Shown: positions 26,449 to 58,800 of the stretch, in pieces
How positions within the stretch are numbered: position 1 is the stretch's first letter
Layout: the number at the start of each line of letters is the position of its first letter
Assembly (NCBI GenBank): GCA_020536535.1
Contig: JAHLWZ010000822.1
Location: forward strand, 45,337-109,336
DNA from: Pelomyxa schiedti
Lineage: Eukaryota; Protista; Evosea
Length of the DNA stretch: 64,000 nt
Reading direction: 5' to 3'
The notes under the pieces: generated by a model
Database searches by the model: none
The model's input: only the letters and a program-made list of their open reading frames with translations
What the model was told of the DNA's origin: nothing
Translations under genes and position numbers: made by a program

Positions 26449-29400
26449 ATGGCTTCCAAGCCGTCTACGCCTGTGAAATTCCCACTCCTTTCAATCTTAT
26501 TTATTCCTTGATTGACAACTTCACTTTTTTTTCCCCCTCCCTCCTTCACTACGACAGAGACCTTCTAGGAGATCAAAGCCTGATGTCAACATCAGCGTGT
26601 TTAGCACATACCAATTTGTGGCGCAGTCTTTTTGTTCCAAGTGCTCAACAGGTAATTGTTGTCAATTTTCTGAATAACTTTTTTTGAGTGTGTGAATGCT
26701 GCTTCTTTTTTAACATTTTTGTTGTTGCTGTTTGGTTTTGATTCATAAACAGAGTTCCCTTTACTTGTGGATGGAAAAGTGGTGCATTTAGGACTGGCAG
26801 TTTCCTGTGATGGAATCACTTGTGAGTCACCATTATTGGGTTCTCCTATCACAAGAACAAGAAGCAATAGCCTTACTTTGAGTGCACCATCACTCCTGGC
26901 TGTGACTCCACCAATTGTGGCTGCCACTCCACCTCCTCCCTCACCTTCTCCTTCATTGAGGTCTTCTACATCATTTGGTGCTACTGTCACTCACTCAGAA
27001 TTCACGGTAGTGGTGGTAAGTGTGCTGGACCGTGATGGATTTTCACAGTTGCCTGAATGTGTTCACAACATCCTGTACGGTCCTCATGGGCACTCCATAA
27101 AGCGCAAGGTGGCAGTATGTCTGATTGATATTGACATGTTGAGTGCTTGGGCTTCAGGGGATATTGACACTGTGTGTTCTCGGTGTTTTTCTGCTGGTTT
27201 TGCTGGGCCTCCGCTACCGGGAACTGAAGGAACTAGTGCTGCAAGGAAATGGGATCCTATTAACAGAGAGGAGTTTATGTCCTTTATGAACAGTGAGGAT
27301 GGACAAAACTGTTGCCTCTTCCGTGCAATGGAAGTTGTTGACTCAGCAGGTGTAACTATTTTCTTTCATGATCTTGTGAGATTTTGTGTTCTGAATAAGA
27401 ACAAGTAAGTGTACCGTTTTCTATACTGTGGAGTTGTTTATGTTACATAGGAGATCATGGAAGAAGGCACTCCCACATCTTGATAAGAGTTCTCTTACAA
27501 CACTCCCCCAAAAATTTGGGGCAACAGCTAAAAAAAAAGGATTCACAGAGGAAATATATGAAATGGAAGATTCTCTCATCCACACTTGCGCACAAAAGTT
27601 CGTGCCACTTTCAGAACTCTTATTGTACTTCATTGGTATTTGTTTCAATATTCGCCTGTTGCTTATCGAAGACAGATCAAGACATTCTTCAAGACACCAA
27701 GTCATTCATTTACCTGATGTCACATTTCCCCCACGACTTCCCTAAGTGGAGAAGTTTCTTATCTCCGACATACAACTTCATATTGCCAGATTATTCTCAG
27801 GCAGCTTTGGAATTAGCTTCTCGTAGAAAAAAAAATGTTTCTTTTAACCATTTTGACTTACTCTTTCAGGGAGTGTTCCACCTTCTCCCACAGTGGATAC
27901 CTCTCTTTCCATGAGTTTCCTCATGTTAGCTACACCACCAAGTATTTCACAACCAATTTCAGCCAATGGCGTAAACTATTTTCCAGAAGTGATTCCATGC
28001 ACCTTGACTTCCATCGATTTGTCACATAATTTCTTAACCGAATTACCAGAAACATTTTTTAAGGAACTAAAGGCTCTCCAAAGGCTTAACTTATCATGTA
28101 ACATTCCCAATATTTCCATATGATTCACCTGCGAATTTCTAAAACAAAGGGAATACATTGAGGAGCCTTCCAGATTCCATAACATCTGCTTTTGAACTTC
28201 GCCTAGTTAATGTATCATGTTCATTTTACAAACAAAACCGTGTAAATTCCTTCAGGTGGAACATAATGATCTCACTTCTCTCCCTCAAATGATTGGTGAC
28301 TGCATGCAAATGGAACTGTTATGCGGTCATAACAGGGTCAGTGTCTCTCTTTTTAAGTCTAACTTAAAAAATCTTGTCAGCTTACTTCTATTCCGCACTC
28401 CCTTGTTGAACATATCCGGGCTAACAAAGTTCAATACCTACCAAATCCACTGAATGAAATGCCGCCATTTAAAACCAATGTTGAGTTGGCAGTCTTCCTG
28501 GAGGAGAGATGTCTTAAGGACTCAATGAGATGGCCCAAGGTGAAGATGGTCTTAGTTGGTCCCGTAAGCAACAGTGTTAGTCATTTTCTATTAAACGATA
28601 GTAGGAAAATGTGGGTAAAACTACTCTCCTAAAGAGATTCCAGAGGAAAGATCACGATGGAATGTCAACTGGTAATAGTACTTCTGATTCTTGTGTTTAT
28701 TTTTGGAATAGATGGCATTAATATCCAAGAATTACTCATCAAGGATGTGATATTCAACTGCTGGGGTAAGCATCTATCTTTATTGCTGTTGAATATTGTT
28801 CTGATCATTTTTTAGATTTTGGAGGACAGGTAAGAAGCCTCTCTCTTCCATATTATTTGATACCATCTTAATATATTTCTTATGAGTAGGCAGTTTTTCT
28901 ACCCACGCATCAAGTATTCTCGGTTTTGAATGTGTTGTCAACTAACTATGTAAAGTTTTTTTTAACTGGAAGAGCTCTGTACCTTGTACTTTTTGATACT
29001 GCCAATCCAAATTCTCATCGCATAGAGTATTGGCTAAGGTATTGAGGTCTTTTTAGAACTTAGTTTAACTGACTTTTAAGACAAATTGTTAAGACTGTAA
29101 GAACACCCCCTTATCCCCCAATCATTCTTGTGGGCACTCGAGCTGATAAATTGCCCTCAATGGAACGAGCACATGAGCTGTGCAATTCCCTTTTAGCTCA
29201 GTTTAAGTGTGTTGTCCAACCTGGCCAGGTTGTTGGGTGCATCCCAGTCTGTGCTAAGGATGGTGACCTATCCGAATTACTCAACTGCATTATTTACACA
29301 GTTCATGCAAAACACTCTGTTCTAAAAGAGAGGGTATGCAAGGCTTGCACCTTATTTCTTTTAAATTGCGTAGGTTCCAGGTAGTTGGGTTGTGCTCGAT

Positions 29401-32400
29401 AGAGTTCTCGCAGAAAAAAGAAAAACAACTCAAGTGATGCATTGGGATGAGTTTAACACCGTCTGCAAGGATGTTAAAGTTCTTCCTGAAGAGATACTCA
29501 CAGTATTCCAAAAGTAAACGAGTCCTGTAAATAACTGCAATGTAGGCTACCAGATTTCTACATGGAGTGGGTTCCCTGTTGCACTTTGAAACTACTAATT
29601 CCAAACTTGGTGAGATAGTTATTCTTGACCCGGAATTTCTGGCTGGTTTGTGGTGGTTATTCGACCTCCAATTTACCTAAAAATCCACAGGTGTGATGTC
29701 AACAATTGTCACATTTAAGACGACGATGATAAACCAAGGTTGTTTATCCAAGGAAGCATTGTTACAGATATGGCATGCTTACAGCCCAGATGACCACCCG
29801 CACTTAATAGACTTGCTACACATGTTTCTTATCATGATGCCTTTTAAAATGCCTGATGGACGAGAAGGCTACCTGGTCCCATGGTATGCAGGAATTATGT
29901 AAAACTTGCTGATACATACCCATACCTAGTGTTTTACCCGAGCAAGAACCTCCAGAAGCTAATGAAATTTGGGGAGACAAGGCTTTGGACTCTCACTATG
30001 AATATGGTTTTTTCACCTCTACAATCCTTTTGGTTTTTAAAAAAAACCAACAGAAAGGACTTTCATTTTTGGCAGTCTTCCCATTGGCCTATTCGGGAGA
30101 ATACTGCTTCAAATTCTGCACATGAAAACTCTCATCCGAAAAGCAATCTGGCGTGACAATGCCCGAGTAGAAGCAATGCCTCCTTGTGGTATGGATCATC
30201 AAGGATACGGTAGTATCTAAAACAAACAAATAAAGACTCCCGAGCACAATTTGGCTATGTAACCTTTGATTGCACGTGCGGGTTCACTCCATACCTGAGA
30301 GTGAGTGTCAGAGCACCAAAGGAAGCAGTTTGTGCCTTCGATTCCAGAAACAAAATAACACCCAAAAAGAAACCATGGCTCCTCACACAGCTAATGGATA
30401 GTGTGCAAACAACTCTAGATTGCTTTTATGGGTATGAGGGCAATATTTAATCTGGCACTAAATTTCCCAAGAGTGCATCAATTGAATATGCAAAGGTTAA
30501 TTACCTGCAACCATTGTCCCCCACCCGTTTCTCCCTCGATTCCCCTTCCTCACCAGTTTTCCTATGATGACATTGCTGTAGCCATTTCCAAGAAGACAAC
30601 GTTACTCTGCCCTGTATTGACGTTTATCTCCGAACTTTTTTCCTTAATCGCGGTGCGTCTAGGTTGAAAATAAAGAGATCCAGCTGTGTGCACTAGTTCC
30701 GGAGTTAATTGTATCTACAAATCTTACAATTACAGCAGAAGAAATATCTGATGTCGTTCCGATAGCAGAAGGTTTTTCCACTATTTTCCATCAATTCTAA
30801 TGCACGTGGAACAGGTGGCTATGGAAAAATATATAAAGGTAGAGTTTCATTACAACAGAAGATTATGACGAAAGTACAGGGCAACTGGATAACAGAGTTG
30901 TTGTTCTGAAGGAATTGAAACTCTCATCTGCAGAACAAACAGCAGAAAAATTTTCAGAATTTCACCAGGAAGCAACAATCATGAGGTGAGCCAACCCCGA
31001 ACTTTTTATTATCAACATTTTATTATGCAGCATGTTGGATAGTCCTTACATCGTTCGCCTGTATGGAGTTTGCATGTCCCCGTTGATAATGGTCATGGAA
31101 TATGTTCCTCTTGGGGACTTATACAAACTCATCCATACTGTGCAAGGCGCTGAGAGTGATGACCACAAGATTCAAAGGTCTTTTAGCAAACCGGAGTTAG
31201 TCAGAGAACATAGACATCGGACATCTGTTGCAAGTGGGACTACTAGCCACAGATGGCAGAACACTGAACTGCCTGAGAGCAGCAGTGCAGGTGCTTGGAG
31301 CGGAGGAAGTAGCAGTGGTAGTAGTGCAAAAAAAGATGAGGAATACCGGTCAACACTGGTAAATTCTCACTCTTCTTCTAATGCCCTGCATGGACTTCCA
31401 GAAGGAGAACAAGCTTTCGAAACTCCAATGAGGTTTCTTTCTTCTTACTTACCAGAGTCCTAATCAATGTCGAACCAAAAAGCTGGAGGATGAAACTTCT
31501 CATCGCACTTGATGTTGCCCGTGGATTGCAATATTTACACAGTCTTCACCCTCCAGTTGTCCATCGGTTGACAAAATTCTCTTTTCCGTTTCTCACAGTT
31601 TTCTACACAGGGATCTCCGCAGTGCCAATATTTTTGTATGCCTTTTTTAACTATATAAACAACCTTGCCTTAACCCCTTTCTTAGATACAAACACTAGAT
31701 ACTGAGGCGCCAGTCAGAGCGAAACTTGCTGATTGTAAGTACTTTATTTTATATTTTTTTTGTCTAGTACAACGAGAAACCAATACTCTAGTTGGTCTCA
31801 GTATTAAAGCTGCAGGAAAGGTAGCTGGAAAACTGCGATCCTGGCAGGTTAGTATCGTAGTTCTTTTTTGTTTACATTTATCTGCTCCAGTGGTTAGCTC
31901 CTGAAATTCTGGATACCAGAATAGAAACCTATGACGAACAATCTGATATCTTTAGTTTTGCGGTACAACACAATAAACAGCCTGTTGCTTACCCTTTCCA
32001 GATACTACTGTTTGAAATCATTTGTCGGCAGCACCCATATGATGGTATTTCTTATGTGAAGGTCAGGTCAGTAGCATTCTAACCGAACAAAAAGAGTATT
32101 TTTCTCAGTACTCGATCGTCACCCGCCATTCCACAATGGAATGGAGGGATGCAAATATGAAGGTGGCCATTTCTCAGGAAAATCTTCGACCTACAATCCC
32201 TCGAACAGTTCCACGGTCCAATTTCGATATCGAGATTTTTGGTAACAAACAAAAAGTAAAGTGAGACATTTGATACAAAGATGCTGGAGAACCGCACCCA
32301 ATACAAGACCCACAGCTGGCGAGGTAGTGAGCAAACTTGAAGAAATATTAGGAATCACTCATATGTCCGAACAAGACAGTATTGCCGAGAGCGTGCCAAG

Positions 32401-47134: not shown

Positions 47135-48252
47135 CTAGGTCTTGTTGGGGACTGGGTTGGCTTCAGGTGCTTTCAACCAAATAGGGCGGACTTCCCTAAT
47201 TACATATTCATCAACTCCATCAGGTAGCATGGCTTTCAAAGTGGCACAATCATTGTCCCTCATTGCTTTTCTCACGGCTGTGGAGCTGACCTCTCTCAAC
47301 TCACCAGGAACAATCTCAATTTTAGAAGGTTCTGCACCAGCGTTTTTTACTGCTTCCATTACACGGGCCAATTCTGCAGTATGGGAAGGTCTCCCTAAAA
47401 CAAGCCAAGTGCACATAGAATTCCTATATGCACAGCAGCGCAGAACAACATCCGCACCATATATTTCACGTACTTCCCACTTATAGGCTTTGATGAGTGG
47501 TGGATGGAAGGTTTACAAAGTCAATGCAGTATCAAGTCAAAGTATGCATACAAACTTGGAAATTTTTCGATAAGGTAGTCAAGAATCAATTGCCTTGAAG
47601 AACGCCCATTGGGGTAGCCCCATGGACAGACATCAATCCAATCAGAGTTAGAGACGGCAAGTCTTTGTAACACTGAATATTGAAGATATAGGAAGGACAC
47701 ATTTTAGCACCTGCACATTGCGTTCCTGGCTGAAAGATTAATAAAGTCATTACCAAGTTTGGATGAAACATAAGAATCAGATGATGGTGCAAGGTATCCA
47801 CCAACAACCTTTGGTTTGAGTAGGCAAAAAAATAACTACACCACAGTTACCTTGAGGTAATATTTGTTTTCCAGATATTCTTTAGCTTTATCGAACATTT
47901 CCATGTGCATTTTGTGAACTGATTTGCGGATTAAAATAATAAAAAAAACCAGTGGCTATAAGTAGATACTCGGGGCGAAAGAGCCTGAGGAGAGTAAGAC
48001 CATAAAACGGAGGTCGGAAGTGTCCCCCCCAATGGCAGTTATGGGATCAGTTATTTTCTTGATGTTTGCGGTTATTTTGTCCACAGACACGGGGTGTGAC
48101 AAGGGGTCGTTTTCAATGGGCTCAATGGCAAACCCATTTAGCGGGCCCACTTGGTCCCGAAACCACGAAACTCGACTGACACCACTTCCTTGCACCGTAG
48201 CGGGCTTGGAAACTTCGGCCTCAGCAGCTGGGCTTGAAGAGGAAACCCCCAT
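47135..48252 (-). CDS. NMNAT: Nicotinamide/nicotinate mononucleotide adenylyltransferase-like (cytidylyltransferase fold)
   Basis: Spliced GSFAP VHKMH, VVGGYLAPSSDSYV, GADVV, VSSTAVR..LPDGVDEYV. Confidence 0.8.
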
Positions 48253-48614
48253 CAAATTGTGCTTTGTGGAATGTCAGTTGGAAAGGTCAGAATACAAAAA
48301 AAGGGAAACGCGCCGAGTAACGTCAAGAACACGGAAGATCTTAATTGAAGAAATGCCAGTGCTGCCACTCACGGGGTTATTAATACCCAATCGAAGAGGG
48401 AAAAAAGAAACCCACAAACTTAATTTCTCGTAATGCCACAGAAGGAAAGTAGGAAAAAGACAACGAATCGATAAAGAAAAACAAAAAAAAACTTTGACAA
48501 CAAAGCCCGGGCTTTGTCGCTGTTCCCCGGACCCCACAAAAACATAAGAAATAGACAACCCACACCGCCATGCCGGGGACCAAGATCCGCCCACGAACGA
48601 CGACCTCGTGGCCA

Positions 48615-51600
48615 ATGGCTAATGCGCGAACAGCGATAACAACGTTATTTATCGTATCGACCTTGTTTGGTCGCTACTACGTAGGGGCTGACGAAAGTTG
48701 CACATTTGTCAACGAATCACCTTTGTTCGTCTTTCCTCCCAGTGCGTTGCCCCTTTCTTGTTTTCACCTTACCACTAGCTGTTTTTTTCCAGTGGGTTTA
48801 CCGATTTTCAGGCGGCTATGTGTTTGACGAAGTCGGGCTGGGAAGGCAGGTCAACTTCACGGTACTTGTTCCTTTTTTTCCTCTCCGTTTGTAATTTACC
48901 TGCCACAAATTCCAGTGGACTTTCACTTCTTGGGCTAAAGGGGAAAACTGTACTTGCCATCACTTTGTTCTGTACTTAGCTGGGGCGGATTCCTATAAGT
49001 GTGGAGATTGTTCATTGAGTACTTGGCTTAATTTAACTTAAAGATCGGATTTTATTGATTGTGCTTTTAACTTCACAAGTGTTACCCCATTTTACGACAC
49101 TGTCACGCTAACAGAAGCTGGAGACTACACTTGGAAGATCGAGTCTTGCAATTGTACTCCCCCCCTTTTTAGCCGCCAATTCACTGTTCTAGGGGAATTG
49201 TACAACAACGAAGTTCAGATTTGTACAGTATTACCCTTTTCTGGTGTTCCCTTTTGCGTCAGAGCTGGCCCGCAGACTAAACCCACTCTCGATTCCCCAA
49301 AGGGAGGCGCTCCACAATCTAGGACACCAACATTCACAGTAGGTTACTGTAACTATTTTTTCAGAGGTTTTAAAACATAACAGTGGGAAACCATCAGCGA
49401 CTGGGGCCGCTCATGCACAACAGACGATGTCAACACTATCACTATTCTCCTTAAAAATGAAACTACCGACTTCCAGGTATTGGATTGGGTACTAGGGTGC
49501 AAGACTTATCTGTGGGCAGGTTTGGCACGTTCTTGATGGCTCTGAGACATCTTTCGATACGCCAGTTTTTGAAAGTTTTGAAAACGGTCTTTATACATGG
49601 AAACTCTCAATTTCTAATGGGTAAGATTAATTTTTTTTTCCCGGTAAAAACACTTCCTTTCTCCCAGGTACTCTTCCGCTTTGAACTCCTCGGAAGCACA
49701 ATTCACTATTTGTGACAATGGCACCTCTCCAGTTGCTCCAGTGTTGACTATACCAGGCGCTGAATACCTGCCTAGACTTCCTTCTTTCACATGGTTGTTT
49801 ACTTCTTTGTCTTCAACTTTCCAACTCTGGATAGGACCCTCACAGATTGGGGATATGACTGTGGCAATAGTGCTGCTCGCAAATTCGTGATTTATATAGA
49901 TACATCACTATCTCCAACTACGCTAGTTGGGGAGACCGCCTCTTCTGTTTATTCTTGGTCTGCAACAGAGAAATTGAACAATGGGCAAACTTATAGGATA
50001 AGAGTCAGCGCTGTTAATGGGATGGAGTTAGAAACATCGAGCGCTGTTTATACCTTCGTTGTTTGTGAAGATACGGCTCCCTCTGTCCTCCTTTCAGTTT
50101 GTTATCATCTTGTGCAAGGTTTTCTTCCTAACTATTCCTCAGGTAAGTCCTCCAAGTTCTGTTGTTGGTGATATCGATAGCCCAATCACTTTTTCTTGGG
50201 CTTCTCCGTCCAGCTGGGGTTTTGTATGTGGTAGCAATGCATCACTGAGCTACGAGTTCTCCTATGCTGGAGATACTTTTACAACATACGAAAATACGTA
50301 TGAATCTACTATTGCCGACCTATCTGGACTTCACTCCTGGAGCGTCACTGCTGTAAATAATGCGTTATCCAAGCGCAGTGACTTTAGTTTCAGCCTCTGC
50401 TCACCTACTGGCACTGGCGTTCCTTCAAATCTAGCAGTAGAGGTATTTCTTTTGAGCTAAAACATGGAAGGAATTAAGATTAACCAGGATAAATTGAGCA
50501 CACCTAAACTTGTATGGGAATGCTACACTGGTGATTCCTGTTCACTAGGGACCCCTTCATTCCTGCTTCATTTGTACAATAGCGGTCGTAACCTTTCTGT
50601 TTCTGTGGAAACAACAAGTAAAGCTGATGGAGGCGAGTACACTCCTTCCCCACCTCTATCTTCTGGGGTATGGACCTGGATAGTTTTTGCAAATAACGGA
50701 TATGACGGTTTTTTACCTCTCGTGGTAACTGCGTTCTAATTGTTCTGCAGCAAACTGGAACAATGCGGCATCTCAATTTTGTATTACTTCGGTTGACAAG
50801 CCAACCCTCATTTCACCAGCTGACGGGAATCACACAAATTCCCTTGTTACTTTTGAGTGGATCATTAACCACTCTTATCTGTGCCCAGAAGACGATTCTT
50901 CCCTTAATTGCACACTCGTTTTGGGTACATCCACAAATGTTACCCGAATATCAATTGGGTCTGCTACCACTGGGGCGATGAGCTACTCAATTGATTTGCC
51001 GATATCAGGAGAAGTATGGTGGAATGTTGAAGTTATCGGTGCAACTACAGGTTCATTATTTGCCAGAAGTGACACGCACTGGTTTGATTTCTTTTACTGG
51101 TGAGTCTTTCTCTTCACAATTAAGGAACTAAAATGGAGGTAGCTTTGGACAATCTGCGTCCACGGCAACTGAGATTTTTCCGTTCGATGCTACTCTAGGA
51201 GATGGTTCCACACTGACTTGGGAAGACAAGGGCCTGGGAACCAATTGTGGTTCTTCCACCTCAATCCGGGGTTATACTGTTAGTGTGATGGATAAGAGTT
51301 CGTTCCTACGCACAATTACTTCCACCACTACAGCAGTCAACGTTTCTGGTCTTGCAGCTGGTGTAACGTATCAGTGGACGGTAGAAAAGTGACAAACCAG
51401 TAACTGTTTTAATGGATTGAGTAGATAGCTGCTTCAAATGGTCTTACGACAGTCTCCTCCGGTCCATTCTCTTTTATTCATTGCTTGACTGGTGCCACTG
51501 TGCCTGCTGTAACTGGTGCCTCACCCTCCAACCAAAACGTTCCTCTTCCAGTCAAACTTCAATGGGATGCCATTAATTGTACGTTCCAGAGACAACTTTT

Positions 51601-54600
51601 TGTTTTAAAAAAAAACCCTGATATTCGCAGTTAAAGGATGTGGCCCTCGGTCAATAGAAATTCTCCTTAATGGAGAGCTAATTGATACTGTTGCAGAGGA
51701 TAAAACTGAGTACACAATCCGTACAACAATCCTCAACTCAGAAGTACACCCACTTTTCAAAATCCTCCAATTAACAAAGCTAGGGTTCTTACAATTGGAC
51801 CCTTATTGCTTATGACGGAGATAAGTCAACCAAAAACGGAGTTTACTCATTTTCTGTGTGCATCTCTGTTCCCCCTTCTGCTCCAGGACTCGACTCTCTG
51901 CTTCCTGGTTGGTACCCAGGTCTTTTCACACCCGCACTCATACCCTGTTTAAGTTGATGGATCCCATCTGTCTTTGGATGATGCAGTATTGAGCTGGCAT
52001 GACGCCAGTATGGATTGGGGAAGCTCAAGCTGTGGAGTGCTCGAGAAGAAGTACTATCTCTACCTCGGGACAAGCCCTTCCAACTTGACCCTTCTTGCCG
52101 TTTTAGCAGATACCACTACAAGGTGGGGCTAATTTTCACCTTCGGAATTCCCTGCGCTAACATGTCCGATTTGCAGTTATTCTCTTAAAAGCAATCGAAC
52201 CTTTATAGAAACTAGTAGTTCCTTCCTTTGGTTTTGGAACGTCATACCGAGCAATAGTCCTTCCATACTATCTACAGCAAGTTCCACGCAATCCCTGTGG
52301 TTGTGCACGTCAATAAACCCTTCAATTCCTCGCCTAGTGTCTCCTGTTCCCGCCAGTTCTATTGGTTTGCCAGCCCTTTTGGAGTGGGACGAGATCTCTT
52401 TTGGAGAAGATTGCATTGGCCAAGAAGTCTACTATTTACTTTTCATTGGACCCTCCACAGCTGATCTCCAATCAGTTGCGGAACTGCCGGCTTATGCTAC
52501 CTCATACCTTCTGGAAAATTACACTACTGGTACTCCACTCAGTTGGCTAAGGACTTATTAACCTAGCCCAGGACAAACGTATTGGAAAATTTCCAAAATA
52601 TCTCCGCTGGCAATAGTTCCGAGCGCCGTAGAATAGTATTTCTTTTTTCACCAGTATTGTCTGTAATTAACGTTCCCAGTTTCTATGTATGCACACCAGG
52701 CATTCCTGATGCGCCAGTCCCCACCCCGTCTTTGACTGCTGGTGTCTTAGTAGCCCCTGTCACCCTCTCATGGTCTCGGCCAAATATGGGCTCATGTGCG
52801 CCTTTTCCTTATTGGTTTTTTGCCTAATTTTATTCCCATAAGGTTCTGGTGAAGAATCTTATAATGTCTTCATCACCAAGGGGTCTGTTCCCCAGTATCG
52901 TGCTACAACCACAAATTTGAGCTTCACTTTTTCCTTCGATTCTGTTGATATTACTCTAACATCTGGGACTTACTACTGGTCCGTTCAGGTACGCATTTAC
53001 CTGCTCATATCCACCCCTCATTAACATCCAGGCCAACAATGGCTACTTTACCAGTGCCTTAAGTAAAAAACAACAAATTGAGATTTGTGTGCCGTCACCA
53101 CCACCCAAGCCTGTTTTGATATCTCCACCCGATGGAGCCGAGGACGAGCCACAAAATATTACGTTCCATGTTGCTCCCACTATTTCTTGGGGAGAGTCGT
53201 GTGGTGTTAATCCCGGTGCTGCTGAATATAGGGTTTGTCCCACCTCTTTTTACACTTACTAACCAGGGAGCACAGCTATTGACTGGTTTGGAAACACTTG
53301 ACACTGACTCCCCTGTTTCTGTGGCAGGGACCACCGCCCCTAACAGTGAAACTGGGACTATCACATTCGCGGTTTGGTCACACCCTACTTCTTGGTCCAT
53401 GACCCTTTGATAAAGGTTACACTGCAAATGGCAACCTGGGTGTGGAGTGTTGATTATGCCAATGACTACGGTCTCACCAATCGTGCGGCACAACGATATG
53501 TTGATGTGTGTCAAGAATATCTTCCAACCGCCCCTACACCCCTTACTCCTGAATCTGGTGATAAAAATATCACAACATTCGGTCAGTGTCCCATCACAAT
53601 ATGTGCATCATTCTTACGAAAACTAGAACCCGTTTTAACCTGGCTAGAATTGAAGTCTACCGATTTCGGCAAAGTTTGTTCTTCTGTACAGTCTGTTGCT
53701 CAGATCGAACTTTACTTTGGTGTCGGGGGCTCATGGGTGACTGGAAATGAATCTTCTTTACCCCACGTCTGGAGTGGTGTGCCCTCTGCCACATCCTACA
53801 AATTTGATGGTGTGTGATTATTATTTTTTCCTAGAAATAATTTCCTTACAGCTTTAAATGTGTCTACTGTCTACACTTGGCAACTTGCCGCCTACAACGG
53901 CTACCATCGCACGATGTCGCCTATCTTTAACTTTACCACGCGAACCACTGATTGCTCTCTCGTCAACTGTACCTTTGGTAAGGGACTTTGTGACAAGGCA
54001 ACTGCTATTTGTGTGTGTTTGCCTGGATGGCACGGGCCCTCCTGTGACATTGAAGACTCGACTTCTACTGAAGCTGAAGGACTTCCAAGTATTTTGAGTT
54101 AATTAGGTTGTTCTTTAAATTCATCTTTCATAGAGTGGGTCATTGCCATTATAGCTGTTGGCTCAGTACTTGTTGCACTCGTTGGTGCAGCTGTTATTGC
54201 AATAATACTGGTTCGGAAAGTGAGAGCTCGCCAGCGTTATACTATCAAGCCTCCGGACTTCGATGAAATCAAGTTTTCACCCGTGAAGGAGCCCATGTTC
54301 TTTATCCCAGAGCAGGAGAACTTCCCTGTGGCATTAATGGAACAGGTAAAATGCCTTGCAGGAATCCCACGGACTAAGAAAAATCCAGTTCCTTTTCGGA
54401 AGTGATAACATGAAACCAATATGGGACCTATGTAAACTCACAGCAGTGACGGAGGCGGATACTGTTGCCAAAGCATTGGTGTATGCCTCAGAGCGCCGAA
54501 AGCAAGGTTATCTTTTTTCTTGAAGCATTGCCATTAACATTCTACAGGCTTACCCCTTCTCACCATGTTGATATCAAACGAAGTAGATGAAGCAAATTCC

Positions 54601-55734
54601 CCAGAAGCATTATTCCGCGCCAACAGTTTTGCTACCAAGGCACTTAGCTCATCTTCCCTGCTTCCTTAACTTTCATAGGCCTTCAAATACTACTCTAAAA
54701 TGATTGGCCTTCCATATGTTTTCAAAACACTAGCAGTTCTTCTACAAGGCTTGATACGAGACCTTGAAGGTTTTTGCGCTCCACCATTCTTTTTCCCGGC
54801 TGAATAAATTAAGATACGGAGGAAGAACAAAAGAGAAAAGATGAGGAAGCTGGGTCTGGTGAGGTTTCATCTGTCAAGTTGTTCAATGCTCAGTATGAGT
54901 TGGACCCCGACAAGATTGGGGACATAGAGGATGCAAGCATAAACGTTCTCACACTGGAGTTCTCATGTCAGAAGTTCATTGTGCAAATTACTCGATCAGC
55001 TCCCAATTGCCCAGGGTGAGGCTTAACCTTCGATTTCATTCTGTTCATCTTTTCCAAGGGAGTTCAAACGTCTTTGTGCACACATTAGGGAGATCGTTGA
55101 AGCTAAATTCCCCCCTTATGTGTACAAGGCCATTGGTGCCTTTATATTCCTTCGCTTCTACAACACAGCCATCACCGTACCTGAGAACTACGGGCTTATG
55201 ACAGGTTAATCATCAAAAAGGAAATAAACCTAGTTTCTAACTTGGAGGGGGAAAAAACAGAGCCACCAGGGCCTGTTGCCCGAAGACAGTTGATCATGCT
55301 GTCAAAGGTCCTACAGAATCTGTCCAATGGTGTAAAATTTGGTGACAAGGAAGAGTTTATGAAGAAGTTGAATAGATTCATAGATACAAACGCACAGCCA
55401 CTGCTAAAGTTTTTCGACAGACTTTGTGTAAGCATTGTCCATCCCCGAATACCGCTTGCTAATGCCTCAACCCATACAGGACAAAGATGCACCACTGGCT
55501 GGTGATGTGGTTATAACCGACGAAATGTACCACGCCTGCATCGCCACACTCTTCAACCAGCTGTGTGTCATTAATCAGGACTCGACAGCCAAGCTCGACT
55601 CGCTCAATCTCCCGCCGGAGATTGTGGCGTGTGTCAGAGCCGGCGGCCAGAAAAAGAAGAAGCACCGCCACCATCACAACGAGGAACAACCTCTCATTAC
55701 AAGCGCCACTTCAACACAACCAACCGACGGGTAA
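48615..55734 (+). CDS. Single-pass receptor-like protein: signal peptide, ~13 FN3-like repeats, EGF, TM helix, cytoplasmic RasGAP domain
   Basis: MANARTAITTLFIVSTLFG leader; repeats ending Y.W.V.A.NG; CVCLPGWHGPSC; TM WVIAIIAVGSVLVALVGAAVIAIILV then RKVRAR; LFRANSFATK, FLRFYNTAI, RRQLIMLSKVLQNLSNGVKFGDKEEFM. Confidence 0.85.
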
Positions 55735-55896: not shown

Positions 55897-58800
55897 CTAA
55901 GTGGCCACAGGTCTTTTCCATTGGGTGGCCTTGGTTGTTGGATTGTAGTAGTACTTTCTGCCTGATGCATCCTTCACTTCTCTCCAACCGGGAGAAAGAG
56001 GCTATTTATTCGTATGAGCACAATCTCTATTGTTACGTTATGTACAAAGCTTACCGCGTTTTCATCCACAACTTCCTCTTCAGACTCTGATTCGGTATCT
56101 GATTCTGAGTCACTTTTGTCGTCATCCACTACCTCCTCCCCAGGCTTGGCAAAACAGGGAGGAGGATTCCACTGAGTAACTCGGGTAAGTTTGTTCCAGT
56201 AATATTTCCGCCCCGTGTTAGCATCAACGCATTCCTTCCACCCGTCATTGGGAAGGCTTGTGGGGGCTGCTTGGGAGGGTGTCGCAGTAGGTGTGGGATT
56301 GGATGCAGGGGTTTTTGTTATGGTGGTGTCGATGGGTGTTGATTTCAGTGTGGGTGTGGCTGCAGCTGCTGGGGTTACTGTTGCTGTGGGTGGGGCTGCA
56401 GCTGCTGGGGTTACTGTTGCTGTGGGTGTGGGTGTGGCTGCCACTGTGGATGTAGGTGTGGTGGCTGTGGGTGTGGAGGTTGTTTGCGCTGGAGTGGAAG
56501 TGCGAGTCGGTGTGCTTGTAGAAGTAGACGTTGTAGAAGGGGAGGTTGATGGAAGGGTGTGCGTTGAAGACGTGGACGGCGATGTAGAGGTTGATGTGGA
56601 GGGAGATGCAGCCATGAGCGCCGAGGAGGAAGTTGATGCAGAAATAGATATGGGTGCTGATGTTGATGGTACAGAAGCTGAGGATCCTGCAAGCTTTGCT
56701 CCAGTTATGCCAACTCCACGCCTCTCCTTAAGTAAGTCTAACAGACGGTTTAATCTGGAGTCCCGAATTTAGGCAGTTCAATGCAAATGTCAACTTATTC
56801 ATACTTTGGAGGCCAGTAGTCGATGGAACTATCACCATCTGCAACCATTGCCCATTCGCGCGTTGGCGTGATTAGTGTCATCTCTAATTTTCCTGGCTTT
56901 TTAGCCACTTGGACCTGGCCTTCAACTTCTCGCAAATCTATTGTACCCTATTTTGTGCTTTCAGAATACCGCAAGTTGAAAAAGGTAATACCTTCAGTGT
57001 CTTCTTGGAAGTATTTGGGGATGTATGATACGACAAAGTGAATAGCTGAAAATAAATCAGCTTCAAAAATATTAACAACGATCATACGTCTTCGACAGTG
57101 TTGCAGAACCACCTCTTTTTCCAGTTTTTAGCCCCGCCTTTGCCTCCCCCAAGTTTAACTAGCCACCCTGAAACGATATATTCTTTATCATTAACAGTCT
57201 TATCCCCATCCTTGACACCTTAGAAATAAAGGATGTCAAAGAAAAGGTGTTACACACAGTTGGACCCTCAGTTGCAACATTGCCCCTCATATGCTGGAAT
57301 TTTACGTGAAGCTTTTTATGTATGTCAGACTAGAAGTACTTAGTTGCTTCAAGAAAGTCCGTCGTGGATACACACATCAAATACTTCCTTTAAATGTGAA
57401 AGCCATTTGTTCAACTGGTCTTCATTCTCAGCAAGTAAGAAATAGGGTCTCATGCTTAGGTCATTTGCATTGTATATCTTGAAGGAGTGCTGCTTGCCTG
57501 AGTCAGTCGCTTTCACAGCCGTTGAGTATTGGGCAAGATCAATTTCACAGGCAGCTGTTTTGTCCTAAATTAATTTAATTTTTCTTTTTTTTTTTAAATC
57601 AGTTGCTCACTGTCTTTGATTGGTAATACTGAAGAATACAATCCTTAGAAAAATCCTTTAGAACAAACCACCTTTTTTGCCATAGTTTCCCTGTGCTAGC
57701 CTGTTTCTTCAACCAACCACAGAATTTTGCCTTTTTTGTGTAATGGCCGTTAGGATAATTCCAAAATCGGTTGCATACCCCTTCAGGAAGGTCATTTGCG
57801 ACCTTAGTACTGGTCTGAGTTGGAATTGGAGATGCCGATGGTGTAGTAACCGGGGCTGAGGCAGACGAATTACTTGTGGTGTCCTTTTTTGAGGTGTCTT
57901 CGTCGTCTGGGAAGTTGGGTGCTTCGTCATCTGGTGAGTCAGGCTCTTCATCAGAGTCTTTTGTCTTGTCAGCAGATTTGGCTGTTGCACTTTCAGCTGT
58001 TGTACTTTCCCCCGAGGCGTTCTTATCCAGTTTTTCTATTGCCTGGCCCTCATCTGAATCGGGTTGCTCCCCGTCATCACGCTTCTCATCTGTGTCATTA
58101 GCAGAATCATTTTTTGAAGAGGTTGCGGTTTTTTCAGCGTGTTTCTTGTCTTCTTCAGAATCAGACATATTTTTCTTTGGAGGAAGAGCAGGCAAACTAT
58201 GCTGGGGAACGGGAGGCGCAGATGGAGCAGGACTACGAGCTGGAGGTTCAGATGGAGTTGAATCGGGGTGCGTGGAAGCCAAGGAAGGACTTGAACCATG
58301 TTCATGGGCTTTGCTTGGTTCATTGGTTTCCCCAGTAGCATTGCCATGACTGGTATCATGCTCACGATGGTGAGATGACTTGTGATGCTTTCCTTCGTTC
58401 TTGGAGCTATCAGCCTTTAAGTCACTGGGCTCAGCCGTGGCCCCACCTTCTTCGGCCGGTGTTGCGGTAGCGGGTGTCTTATCTTTGGGTTTGTCTGTTT
58501 TGTCTTTGTGATGAGAAGAGTGGTGGTGCGCGGAAGAGTGCCCATCCTTTTTCTCGCCGTCTTTCTTGTCCTTTTTATCCGCGCCGTCTTTCTTCGCACC
58601 GTGGTCTCTGTGTCGAGACGACGAATGCGCTGCTTTGGGTGTAGTAGAAGCTGCAATAGCGTCGGCTTCGGCAGTCACTACGCTTGTTGAATCGGCCGGC
58701 TCCCCGCCGTTTGCGTTTGGCTCCGAGGTAGAGGTAGTAGCAGTAGCAGTAGTATTGCTCGGATCGCCTCCAGACGGTACGGGATCTCGCGGTTTGTGCG

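What the first reader, a model, noticed from the sequence alone, without database searches (positions are those of the whole stretch)
48615..55734. Receptor-type RasGAP: FN3-like array + EGF + TM + intact NF1/p120-type GAP domain
Seen: signal-like leader, a large repetitive ectodomain, an EGF motif (~53951-54045), a TM helix (~54136-54213) followed by basic residues, and a contiguous RasGAP domain with the arginine finger (LFRANS), the FLR motif and SKVLQNLSN..FG.KE.FM. Established: classical RasGAPs are cytosolic, and plexins are the well-known TM receptors with a GAP domain, but they use Sema/PSI/IPT ectodomains and a split GAP. Inference: an independently assembled surface receptor that couples contact or ligand binding directly to Ras/Rap shut-off in an amoeba. 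I know of no characterised family with this architecture.
Basis: partly seen in the sequence, partly recalled or inferred. Interest (0 to 1): 0.9.

Follow-up and report, generated by a model that had tools for sequence, protein, structure and literature searches.

The report
Single-pass receptor with RasGAP tail
This Pelomyxa schiedti gene encodes a cell-surface protein whose outside is a rod of 13 fibronectin-like domains and whose inside is a complete Ras "off-switch" enzyme. It belongs to an old, widespread protist receptor family that I could not find described in any paper.

Summary
Window 48615-55734 (+) is one 34-exon gene of Pelomyxa schiedti (GenBank KAH3756518.1, 1869 aa, annotated only as a RasGAP).

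It encodes, in order:
- a signal-like leader;
- 13 Cys-containing FN3-like repeats;
- one EGF module;
- one TM helix followed by a basic cluster;
- a conserved juxtamembrane motif;
- a contiguous NF1/p120-type RasGAP domain with the arginine finger, FLR and the catalytic Lys intact.

Evidence for a single gene:
- My blind gene model agrees with the public one.
- Twelve of 18 RasGAP loci in this genome have a TM helix upstream of the GAP. One carries PSI, TM and the GAP start in a single uninterrupted ORF.
- Full-length transcripts with ectodomain, TM and GAP exist in other protists.

The gene is not a one-off. TM-linked RasGAPs with varied ectodomains occur in Amoebozoa, Rigifila and Thecamonas, and most of their GAP domains form one clade.

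The cytoplasmic domain ranks with NF1, p120GAP and SynGAP, far above plexins.

Eight literature searches found no description.

Ligand or contact control of GAP activity is inferred, not shown. No RNA reads could be laid on this locus. The scan had already noted two paralogues elsewhere in this genome.

The parts
48615..55734 (+). Whole coding region: 34 exons and 33 introns (39-70 nt), encoding 1869 aa (P0010 = KAH3756518.1)
   Evidence: P0010 maps exactly onto the window. My blind model agrees in 1862/1869 aa.
48615..48689 (+). Signal-like leader MANARTAITTLFIVSTLFGRYYVGA. It has Arg in the n-region, a 13-aa h-region of mean hydropathy 1.92, and V-G-A at -3 to -1.
   Evidence: Complete relatives carry clear leaders (sequences). 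No dedicated signal-peptide predictor was available.
48823..53955 (+). 13 tandem FN3-like repeats of about 95-105 aa (aa 47-1398). Each has an invariant Trp and Cys early in the repeat, and a YxWxVxAxNG motif and a late Cys that are nearly invariant.
   Evidence: Self-trained profile finds 13 units. Alignment A2. Its profile hits titin, FNDC3A and neogenin FN3 chains. AF2 model pLDDT 82, and the top Foldseek matches are mostly FN3 domains. Pfam fn3 38.2 bits.
53953..54045 (+). EGF module, six Cys: C-x4-C-x6-C-x6-C-x-C-x8-C
   Evidence: EGF_Teneurin 24.8 bits on exon 53818-54099. An EGF exon is conserved in 10 paralogues.
54136..54213 (+). Transmembrane helix WVIAIIAVGSVLVALVGAAVIAIILV (aa 1444-1469)
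   Evidence: Hydropathy 2.93-2.97, the maximum of the protein. It is acidic before (DIEDSTSTEAEGLPK) and basic after. An equivalent helix sits in 11 paralogues.
54214..54276 (+). Stop-transfer cluster RKVRARQR and juxtamembrane motif PPDFDEIKF
   Evidence: The P-D-F-x-x-L-x-F consensus is conserved across 29 TM-type RasGAPs with unrelated ectodomains (alignment A3).
54556..55328 (+). RasGAP domain, Pfam PF00616 envelope (aa 1556-1752), spread over six exons. The GAPex helices begin earlier, around 54389.
   Evidence: 94.9 bits, full profile. Exon-level hits. NF1 GRD E 2e-27. AF2 model pLDDT 88, top Foldseek match NF1 GRD at E 1.8e-12.
54610..54627 (+). Arginine-finger motif LFRANS (finger Arg1576)
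   Evidence: Aligned to NF1 LFRGNS. Invariant in A3.
54640..54678 (+). 39-nt GC-AG intron just after the finger motif
   Evidence: The genome paper reports 1.59% GC-AG introns.
55147..55155 (+). FLR motif (Arg1713)
   Evidence: Aligned to NF1 FLRF. Invariant in A3.
55302..55361 (+). SKVLQNLSN (Lys1745) and FGDKEEFM
   Evidence: Aligned to NF1 SKILQSIAN. K, F, G, K, E and M are invariant in A3.
55648..55734 (+). C-terminal tail with the K/H-rich stretch QKKKKHRHHHNEE, and the stop codon

Best explanation
The gene encodes a type I membrane glycoprotein.

Shown by sequence, profiles and models:
- a cleavable-looking leader;
- an extended extracellular rod of 13 FN3-like domains plus one EGF module;
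- one TM helix with a positive-inside flank;
- a linker of about 50 residues carrying a family-wide PDFxxLxF motif;
- a complete NF1/p120-type RasGAP domain with all catalytic residues.

Inferred mechanism:
- The TM anchor keeps the GAP permanently at the membrane, beside lipid-anchored Ras-family GTPases.
- Binding of a surface, prey or neighbouring-cell ligand to the ectodomain clusters or relocates the receptor. Ras (or Rap) is then switched off locally at the contact site.
- In an amoeba this would trim the Ras patches that drive pseudopods, macropinocytic cups and phagocytic cups.
- The paralogues carry different ectodomains on the same cytoplasmic cassette: C-type lectin with FN3-like repeats, or PSI. 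That fits a panel of receptors for different ligands feeding one output.
For: One gene:
- The exact map of P0010 and my blind model agree.
- The exon 54134-54345 encodes the stalk end, the TM helix and 44 cytoplasmic residues together.
- Introns of 41-45 nt leave no room for a promoter.
- 10 paralogous loci show the same order of repeats, EGF, TM and GAP.
- Locus L021 has PSI, a TM helix and the RasGAP start with its arginine finger in one stop-free 1388-codon ORF.
- Trinity transcripts of Rigifila, Clastostelium, Soliformovum, Gocevia and Cavostelium encode ectodomain, TM and GAP in one ORF.

Topology:
- Hydropathy and flanking charges.
- 25 N-glycosylation sequons in 1418 ectodomain residues against 1 in 400 cytoplasmic residues (Fisher p = 0.028).

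Catalytic competence:
- Full RasGAP profile match.
- Finger Arg, FLR and Lys align to NF1 and are invariant in 29 family members.
- The model matches KRAS-bound NF1 GRD.

Family:
- The TM helix lies a fixed 44-56 residues before the GAP profile in most of 56 rows, some of them duplicate isoforms, and 27-35 residues before it in the cadherin-like group.
- 36 of 42 TM-type GAP domains lie on one side of a branch with 99% support.
- One clade for all TM-type domains is not rejected (p-AU 0.61).

Biological plausibility: the RasGAP NF1 limits macropinocytosis and phagocytosis in Dictyostelium (title and abstract of PMC4374526, listed).
Against:
- There is no experimental GAP assay, no localisation and no known ligand.
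- The signal peptide was judged by eye and by hydropathy only.
- Nothing shows that the ectodomain regulates the GAP. The GAP could be constitutively active.
- The substrate (Ras, Rap or another Ras-family GTPase) cannot be read from the sequence.
- The tree is a quick search. Its rows were drawn from searches seeded with this family, and it is unrooted.
- Cysteine density does not differ between the ectodomain and the cytoplasmic part.
Confidence: 0.6

Rival explanations
1. It is an adhesion or cell-coat protein with a constitutive GAP. The FN3/EGF rod serves adhesion or the glycocalyx. The GAP is simply tethered to the membrane and is not regulated by ligand.
For: FN3 and EGF arrays are typical of adhesion molecules. 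No regulatory domain lies between the TM helix and the GAP apart from a linker of about 50 residues.
Against: The juxtamembrane motif and the fixed TM-to-GAP spacing are conserved across unrelated ectodomains. That suggests a functional coupling element. Twelve paralogues with different ectodomains look like a receptor panel.
Confidence: 0.25
2. It is a resident of internal membranes (phagosome, endosome or contractile vacuole). The repeat array faces the lumen and the GAP acts on endomembrane Ras-family GTPases.
For: The topology evidence cannot tell the plasma membrane from endomembranes. The K/H-rich C-terminal tail is of unknown role.
Against: Long FN3/EGF, lectin, PSI/TIG and disintegrin ectodomains are usual for surface proteins.
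Confidence: 0.1
3. It is a catalytically inactive scaffold (pseudo-GAP), as in IQGAPs.
For: Activity was not measured.
Against: The finger Arg, the FLR Arg and the Lys are present and invariant in the family. NF1, p120GAP and SynGAP rank far above IQGAP.
Confidence: 0.04
4. It is a gene-model artefact: an ectodomain gene and a cytosolic RasGAP gene wrongly fused by the annotators.
For: No reads were laid on this locus. The Thecamonas entry P0001 does look like two tandem units fused into one protein.
Against: A blind model gives the same structure. The TM exon carries both extracellular and cytoplasmic residues. The same order holds in 11 paralogues, and L021 has it in one ORF. Single transcripts exist in five other species.
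Confidence: 0.01

Closest known systems
Neurofibromin, p120GAP and SynGAP (classical RasGAPs, Pfam PF00616)
   Same: The GAP-related domain is contiguous, with GAPex and GAPc helices, the arginine finger FRxNS, the FLR motif and the KxLQNL Lys. NF1 GRD is the best match by sequence (E 2e-27; family profile 1.6e-61) and by predicted structure (E 1.8e-12, 28-29% identity).
   Different: The classical proteins are cytosolic and are recruited through C2, PH, SH2 or Sec14 modules. This one has a leader, a 1400-residue ectodomain and a TM helix about 50 residues before the domain. Its GAP domain falls in a clade of TM-linked GAPs separate from the NF1-like sequences sampled.
Plexins
   Same: Both are single-pass type I receptors whose cytoplasmic part has a RasGAP-type fold. 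Some relatives of this gene carry PSI and IPT/TIG domains outside the cell: P0020, P0133, P0149 and paralogue L021.
   Different: This gene has no Sema, PSI or IPT domain. It has no Rho-GTPase-binding insert splitting the GAP and no Pfam Plexin_cytopl match. No plexin chain is matched even at E 10 by the family profile. In the fold search plexins come after NF1, p120GAP, SynGAP and IQGAP, at about 10% identity.
Mastigamoeba balamuthi m51a1_g8516 (P0076) and Rigifila ramosa P0103 and P0114
   Same: They share the full layout of W/C FN3-like repeats, EGF, TM, PxFxxLxF motif and RasGAP. P0076 is 48% identical over the TM-to-C-terminus region. The Rigifila proteins carry 10 and 18 copies of the same repeat.
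   Different: Repeat number differs. P0103 has extra FG-GAP repeats and the Rigifila proteins have a second EGF. All are uncharacterised predictions.
Receptor enzymes with FN3 ectodomains (receptor tyrosine phosphatases, Eph and cytokine receptors)
   Same: An FN3 array, one TM helix and a cytoplasmic signalling module. Their FN3 domains are among the top structural matches of the repeat.
   Different: The output here is a GTPase-activating domain, not a kinase or a phosphatase. The FN3-like units carry a conserved Cys pair.

Membership tests
RasGAP (PF00616) | Match to the family profile above the curated cut-off, over the whole domain | tested here: met
   94.9 bits against a cut-off of 28.3, profile positions 1-207 of 207, aa 1556-1752. 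At exon level, 39.7 bits on window 55027-55206.
RasGAP (PF00616) | Arginine finger in the FRxxS motif | tested here: met
   LFRANS aligns to NF1 LFRGNS. The Arg is invariant in 29 relatives.
RasGAP (PF00616) | FLR motif and the Lys of KxLQxLxN that stabilise the finger loop and switch contacts | tested here: met
   FIFLRFYN and SKVLQNLSN align to NF1 MFLRFIN and SKILQSIAN. They are invariant in A3.
RasGAP (PF00616) | All-helical GRD fold | tested here: met
   AF2 model pLDDT 88.3, pTM 0.85. NF1, p120GAP and SynGAP are the top Foldseek matches, with TM-scores of 0.63-0.71.
RasGAP (PF00616) | Stimulates GTP hydrolysis by a Ras-family GTPase | not testable with these tools
   A biochemical assay is needed.
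Plexin | Sema domain followed by PSI and IPT domains in the ectodomain | tested here: not met
   Pfam on P0010 gives only RasGAP, fn3 and EGF. The exon-level scans agree.
Plexin | Plexin-type cytoplasmic region: a GAP split by a Rho-GTPase-binding insert (PF08337) | tested here: not met
   The GAP is contiguous and has no PF08337 hit. No plexin chain appears at E up to 10 with the family profile. Plexins rank 27th or lower by fold.
Plexin | Single-pass receptor with a cytoplasmic GAP of the RasGAP fold | tested here: met
Fibronectin type III domain | Profile match and seven-strand beta sandwich | tested here: met
   fn3 38.2 bits against a cut-off of 25. The repeat profile hits titin at 1e-10 and FNDC3A at 9e-5. 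In the fold search most top matches are FN3 or FN3-type cytokine-receptor domains. Only 5 of 29 single repeats reach fn3 on their own, so it is a divergent, Cys-bearing variant.
EGF-like domain | Six-Cys pattern with CxC and GxxGxxC | tested here: inconclusive
   The pattern is readable in CSLVNCTFGKGLCDKATAICVCLPGWHGPSC. EGF_Teneurin scores 24.8 bits on the exon (cut-off 24.3) but 20.3 bits in the whole protein.
Type I membrane receptor | N-terminal signal peptide | tested here: inconclusive
   n/h/c regions and V-G-A at -3 to -1 by inspection, with h-region hydropathy 1.92. No predictor was available.
Type I membrane receptor | One TM helix with a positive-inside flank and glycosylation sites confined to the N-terminal side | tested here: met
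   Hydropathy 2.97. RKVRARQR lies after the helix and an acidic stretch before it. Sequons number 25 against 1 (p = 0.028).
Type I membrane receptor | Binds an extracellular ligand that changes the cytoplasmic output | not testable with these tools
   No ligand is known.

The most novel reading that the evidence does not exclude
These proteins are survivors of an ancient lineage of single-pass receptors with a TM-juxtamembrane-RasGAP cassette, at least as old as the common ancestor of Amoebozoa, CRuMs and apusomonads. Its PSI/IPT-bearing branch is the stock from which plexins arose, by gaining a Sema domain and an insert in the GAP. Receptor-to-GAP signalling of the plexin type would then be far older than the choanoflagellate-animal ancestor to which PMC6374515 assigns it.

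Evidence that leaves this open:
- PSI+TIG+TM+RasGAP proteins occur in Gocevia and Soliformovum, and PSI+TM+RasGAP in this genome.
- A single clade of all TM-type GAP domains is not rejected.

Evidence that weakens it:
- Their GAP domains show no special sequence or structural affinity to plexins.
Probability: 0.15. Interest if true: 0.85.

Novelty: new variant of a known kind. Interest (0 to 1): 0.68.

Why it matters
Ras switching is normally controlled from receptors through adaptor chains, and the RasGAPs studied so far are soluble proteins recruited to membranes. This family wires a classical RasGAP directly to an extracellular recognition array through one helix.

- It has up to a dozen paralogues in one amoeba.
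- It is present in several deep branches of the eukaryotes related to animals, fungi and amoebae.

If the ectodomain controls the GAP, this is a short, experimentally tractable route from surface recognition to local Ras shut-off. The cells concerned feed and move using Ras patches.

It also offers a comparison point, and possibly an ancestor, for plexin signalling.

Tried and rejected
No runs were found and read laying was not used.
- First gene finders: a length-maximising model over-extended exons. A weak codon model stopped early. Adding splice and branch-site signals gave a full model. One GAP intron (55205-55260) was then corrected by comparison with paralogues.
- The TM exon has no paralogue by sequence. 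The TM position is conserved, its sequence is not.
- L021 was first taken for a non-TM RasGAP. It turned out to have PSI and a TM helix.
- The AU test on the full 71-row tree did not finish. A 41-row test under a simpler model was used instead.
- Plexin affinity was looked for and not found.
- Literature: eight searches found no description of a TM-linked RasGAP. I read three papers on plexin origin, the Mastigamoeba genome and Ras-module evolution. None of the three mentions one. The library lacks most subscription journals, so this is not proof of absence.
- No self-joined spliced model was sent to any search tool. Searches used exon references, and then the public protein P0010 that a search returned.
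Full report
**What is there**

The region is eukaryotic coding DNA broken by many very short introns. Translating the stop-free pieces by reference gave three Pfam results.
- RasGAP (PF00616) matched window 55027-55206 at 39.7 bits (profile 128-183). It also matched 54538-54666 (profile 1-31), which holds LFRANS.
- An EGF module matched 53818-54099.
- fn3 gave weak hits in the upstream exons.

I built a gene model blind, from codon bias, splice and branch-site signals and a narrow intron-length prior. I corrected one GAP intron by comparison with paralogues.

A profile of one GAP exon (A1) was searched against 1.84 billion representative proteins. Among the hits was P0010.
- It is the public prediction of this very gene: KAH3756518.1, 'GTPase-activator protein for Ras family GTPase [Pelomyxa schiedti]'.
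- It maps exactly onto the window as 34 exons, from 48615 to the stop at 55732-55734. The 33 introns are 39-70 nt long (median 44) and one is GC-AG.
- My model agrees in 1862 of 1869 residues.

The genome statistics of G000 are 52.4 Mb in 5337 contigs. They equal those of the P. schiedti paper, which used Augustus, PASA and EVM with a transcriptome and reports 1.59% GC-AG introns.

I did not send any self-joined spliced model to a search tool. Searches used exon references and then P0010.

**Anatomy (window coordinates)**

- Leader, 48615-48689. It has a basic n-region, a 13-residue h-region and V-G-A before the likely cut.
- Repeat array, 48823-53955: thirteen tandem repeats of about 100 aa.
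  - A Trp and a Cys early in the repeat are invariant. The Trp of YxWxVxAxNG and a late Cys are nearly invariant (A2).
  - The repeat profile hits FN3 domains of titin (1e-10), FNDC3A and neogenin in the PDB.
  - An AlphaFold model (pLDDT 82) mostly matches FN3 and FN3-type cytokine-receptor domains.
  - Pfam fn3 scores 38.2 bits on the whole protein.
  - So 'FN3-like array' is right, as a divergent Cys-bearing variant. Only 5 of 29 single repeats reach fn3 alone.
- EGF module with six Cys, 53953-54045.
- TM helix, 54136-54213. It is the hydropathy maximum of the protein. It is acidic before and has RKVRARQR after.
- Sequons: there are 25 N-glycosylation sequons outside against 1 inside (p = 0.028).
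- RasGAP domain, aa 1556-1752, matching the whole Pfam profile at 94.9 bits.
  - The finger Arg1576, FLR (Arg1713) and Lys1745 align to NF1 R1276, R1391 and K1423. The NF1 numbering is from my own knowledge.

**One gene or two?**

Four lines of evidence point to one gene.
1. The exon 54134-54345 encodes the last ectodomain residue, the TM helix and 44 cytoplasmic residues. The neighbouring introns are 41-45 nt.
2. The GAP exon has at least 18 matches in this genome.
   - Ten fetched loci show the same order of repeats, EGF and GAP.
   - Each has a strongly hydrophobic 21-mer followed by an R/K cluster right after the EGF exon.
3. An eleventh locus, L021, carries three things in one uninterrupted 1388-codon ORF, so no splicing is needed to join them there:
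   - PSI domains;
   - a TM helix (IIIGAVCGFFVLLLLALGGLA, then a basic cluster);
   - the RasGAP start with its arginine finger.
4. Relatives from Trinity transcriptomes of five species are single ORFs with ectodomain, TM and GAP. The species are Rigifila, Clastostelium, Soliformovum, Gocevia and Cavostelium.

Twelve of the 18 RasGAP loci are therefore TM-linked. Six show no convincing TM helix.

**The wider family**

- Complete GAP domains were found in 118 rows among the fetched proteins. Of these, 56 rows (including duplicate isoforms) have a TM-grade helix plus a basic cluster upstream.
  - In most of them the helix lies 44-56 residues before the GAP profile.
  - In a cadherin-like group with two GAP domains it lies 27-35 residues before it.
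- The ectodomains differ:
  - W/C FN3-like repeats with EGF: Pelomyxa, Mastigamoeba and Rigifila. The same repeat occurs 10 to 18 times in Rigifila.
  - C-type lectin with the same repeats: Pelomyxa paralogues.
  - PSI with IPT/TIG: Gocevia, Soliformovum and unnamed contigs.
  - EGF-bearing ectodomains otherwise without a Pfam match: P0070, P0125 and P0127.
  - Disintegrin: Thecamonas.
- The cytoplasmic alignment A3 of 29 members shows a shared juxtamembrane motif (PDFxxLxF) and invariant catalytic residues.
- In a quick maximum-likelihood tree, 36 of 42 TM-type GAP domains lie on one side of a branch with 99% support, away from all non-TM RasGAPs. The TM label needs 2 changes against 22.6 when shuffled.
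- On a 41-row set, forcing all TM-type domains into one clade is not rejected (p-AU 0.61).
- Caveats: the rows come from searches seeded with this family, the tree search was quick, and the tree is unrooted.
- The closest named relative of this gene is Mastigamoeba P0076, at 48% identity over the TM-to-C-terminus region.

**Relation to plexins**

- By sequence the cytoplasmic part matches NF1 (2e-27), p120GAP and SynGAP.
- The family profile matches NF1 at 1.6e-61 and finds no plexin chain even at E 10.
- The AlphaFold model (pLDDT 88) ranks NF1, p120GAP, SynGAP and IQGAP first. Plexins follow from rank 27, at about 10% identity.
- This gene has no Sema, PSI or IPT domain and no insert in the GAP.
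- It works like a plexin in outline, as a receptor with a cytoplasmic GAP, but it is not a member of that family.

**How it probably works**

Shown: the architecture, the topology signals and catalytic-site integrity.

Inferred: the TM anchor holds an active GAP next to lipid-anchored Ras-family GTPases. Ligand or contact binding by the long ectodomain clusters or relocates it, so Ras or Rap is switched off locally. In Dictyostelium the RasGAP NF1 limits macropinocytosis and phagocytosis (PMC4374526, listed). A receptor-borne GAP could do the same at sites of contact.

The conserved spacing and juxtamembrane motif argue for coupling between the helix and the GAP, but regulation is untested. 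A constitutively tethered GAP on an adhesion protein is the main rival.

**Novelty**

Eight full-text searches and three papers read gave no description of a TM-linked classical RasGAP (searches; papers). The proteins are in public databases under generic names such as 'GTPase-activator protein', 'disintegrin' and 'hypothetical protein'.

The scan itself had already noted two paralogues on other pieces of this genome, s1-383123 and s1-383142, with follow-up verdicts like mine. It had also noted the repeat array of this gene as s1-611603. These are not independent evidence.

I rate this a new variant of a known kind: known domains and a known concept (a receptor carrying a GAP) in an undescribed, old and widespread family.

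Noticed in passing
L021:3748-7911 (+) = G000:C851, about 26947-31110: A paralogue with Plexin-repeat (PSI) domains, a TM helix and the RasGAP start lies in one stop-free 1388-codon ORF. The window gene, by contrast, has 33 introns, so intron density differs sharply between paralogues.
   Followed up: partly
P0020, P0133 (Gocevia fonbrunei), P0149 (Soliformovum irregulare), P0016, P0022, P0038: These proteins have PSI and several IPT/TIG domains, one TM helix and a contiguous classical RasGAP. The ectodomain is plexin-like but lacks Sema, and they occur in Amoebozoa. The plexin-origin paper I read does not mention them.
   Followed up: partly
P0009 (4016 aa), P0143 (4200 aa), P0002, P0008, P0031, P0101: Giant receptors with cadherin-like repeat arrays, one TM helix and, in five of the six, two tandem RasGAP domains (P0101 shows one). 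Their first GAP domain does not join the main TM-type clade in the free tree.
   Followed up: partly
P0001 (Thecamonas trahens XP_013755410.1, 'disintegrin'): The predicted protein contains two complete units of disintegrin repeats, TM and RasGAP in tandem. It is probably two neighbouring genes fused by annotation.
   Followed up: no
window 54640-54678: A 39-nt GC-AG intron lies directly after the arginine-finger motif. It is the only non-GT donor among the 33 introns.
   Followed up: partly
window 48615-55734 and loci L014-L024: Introns are very uniform (39-56 nt, mode 43-45). Most have a CTAAC/TTAAC-like motif some 10-20 nt before the 3' AG.
   Followed up: partly
window 55974-56615 (-): A convergent neighbour 240 bp downstream encodes a WW-domain protein (49 bits) with a long Thr/Pro/Ser/Ala-rich tract.
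   Followed up: partly
window 47135-48255 (-): Upstream ORF pieces on the minus strand have no Pfam match. They leave about 360 bp of divergent intergenic DNA before the start codon at 48615.
   Followed up: no
alignment A3, first 60 columns: A juxtamembrane motif P-D/N-F/W/Y-x-x-L/I-x-F/Y/W lies 10-15 residues after the TM helix. It is shared by receptors with unrelated ectodomains and from different supergroups, and its role is unknown.
   Followed up: partly
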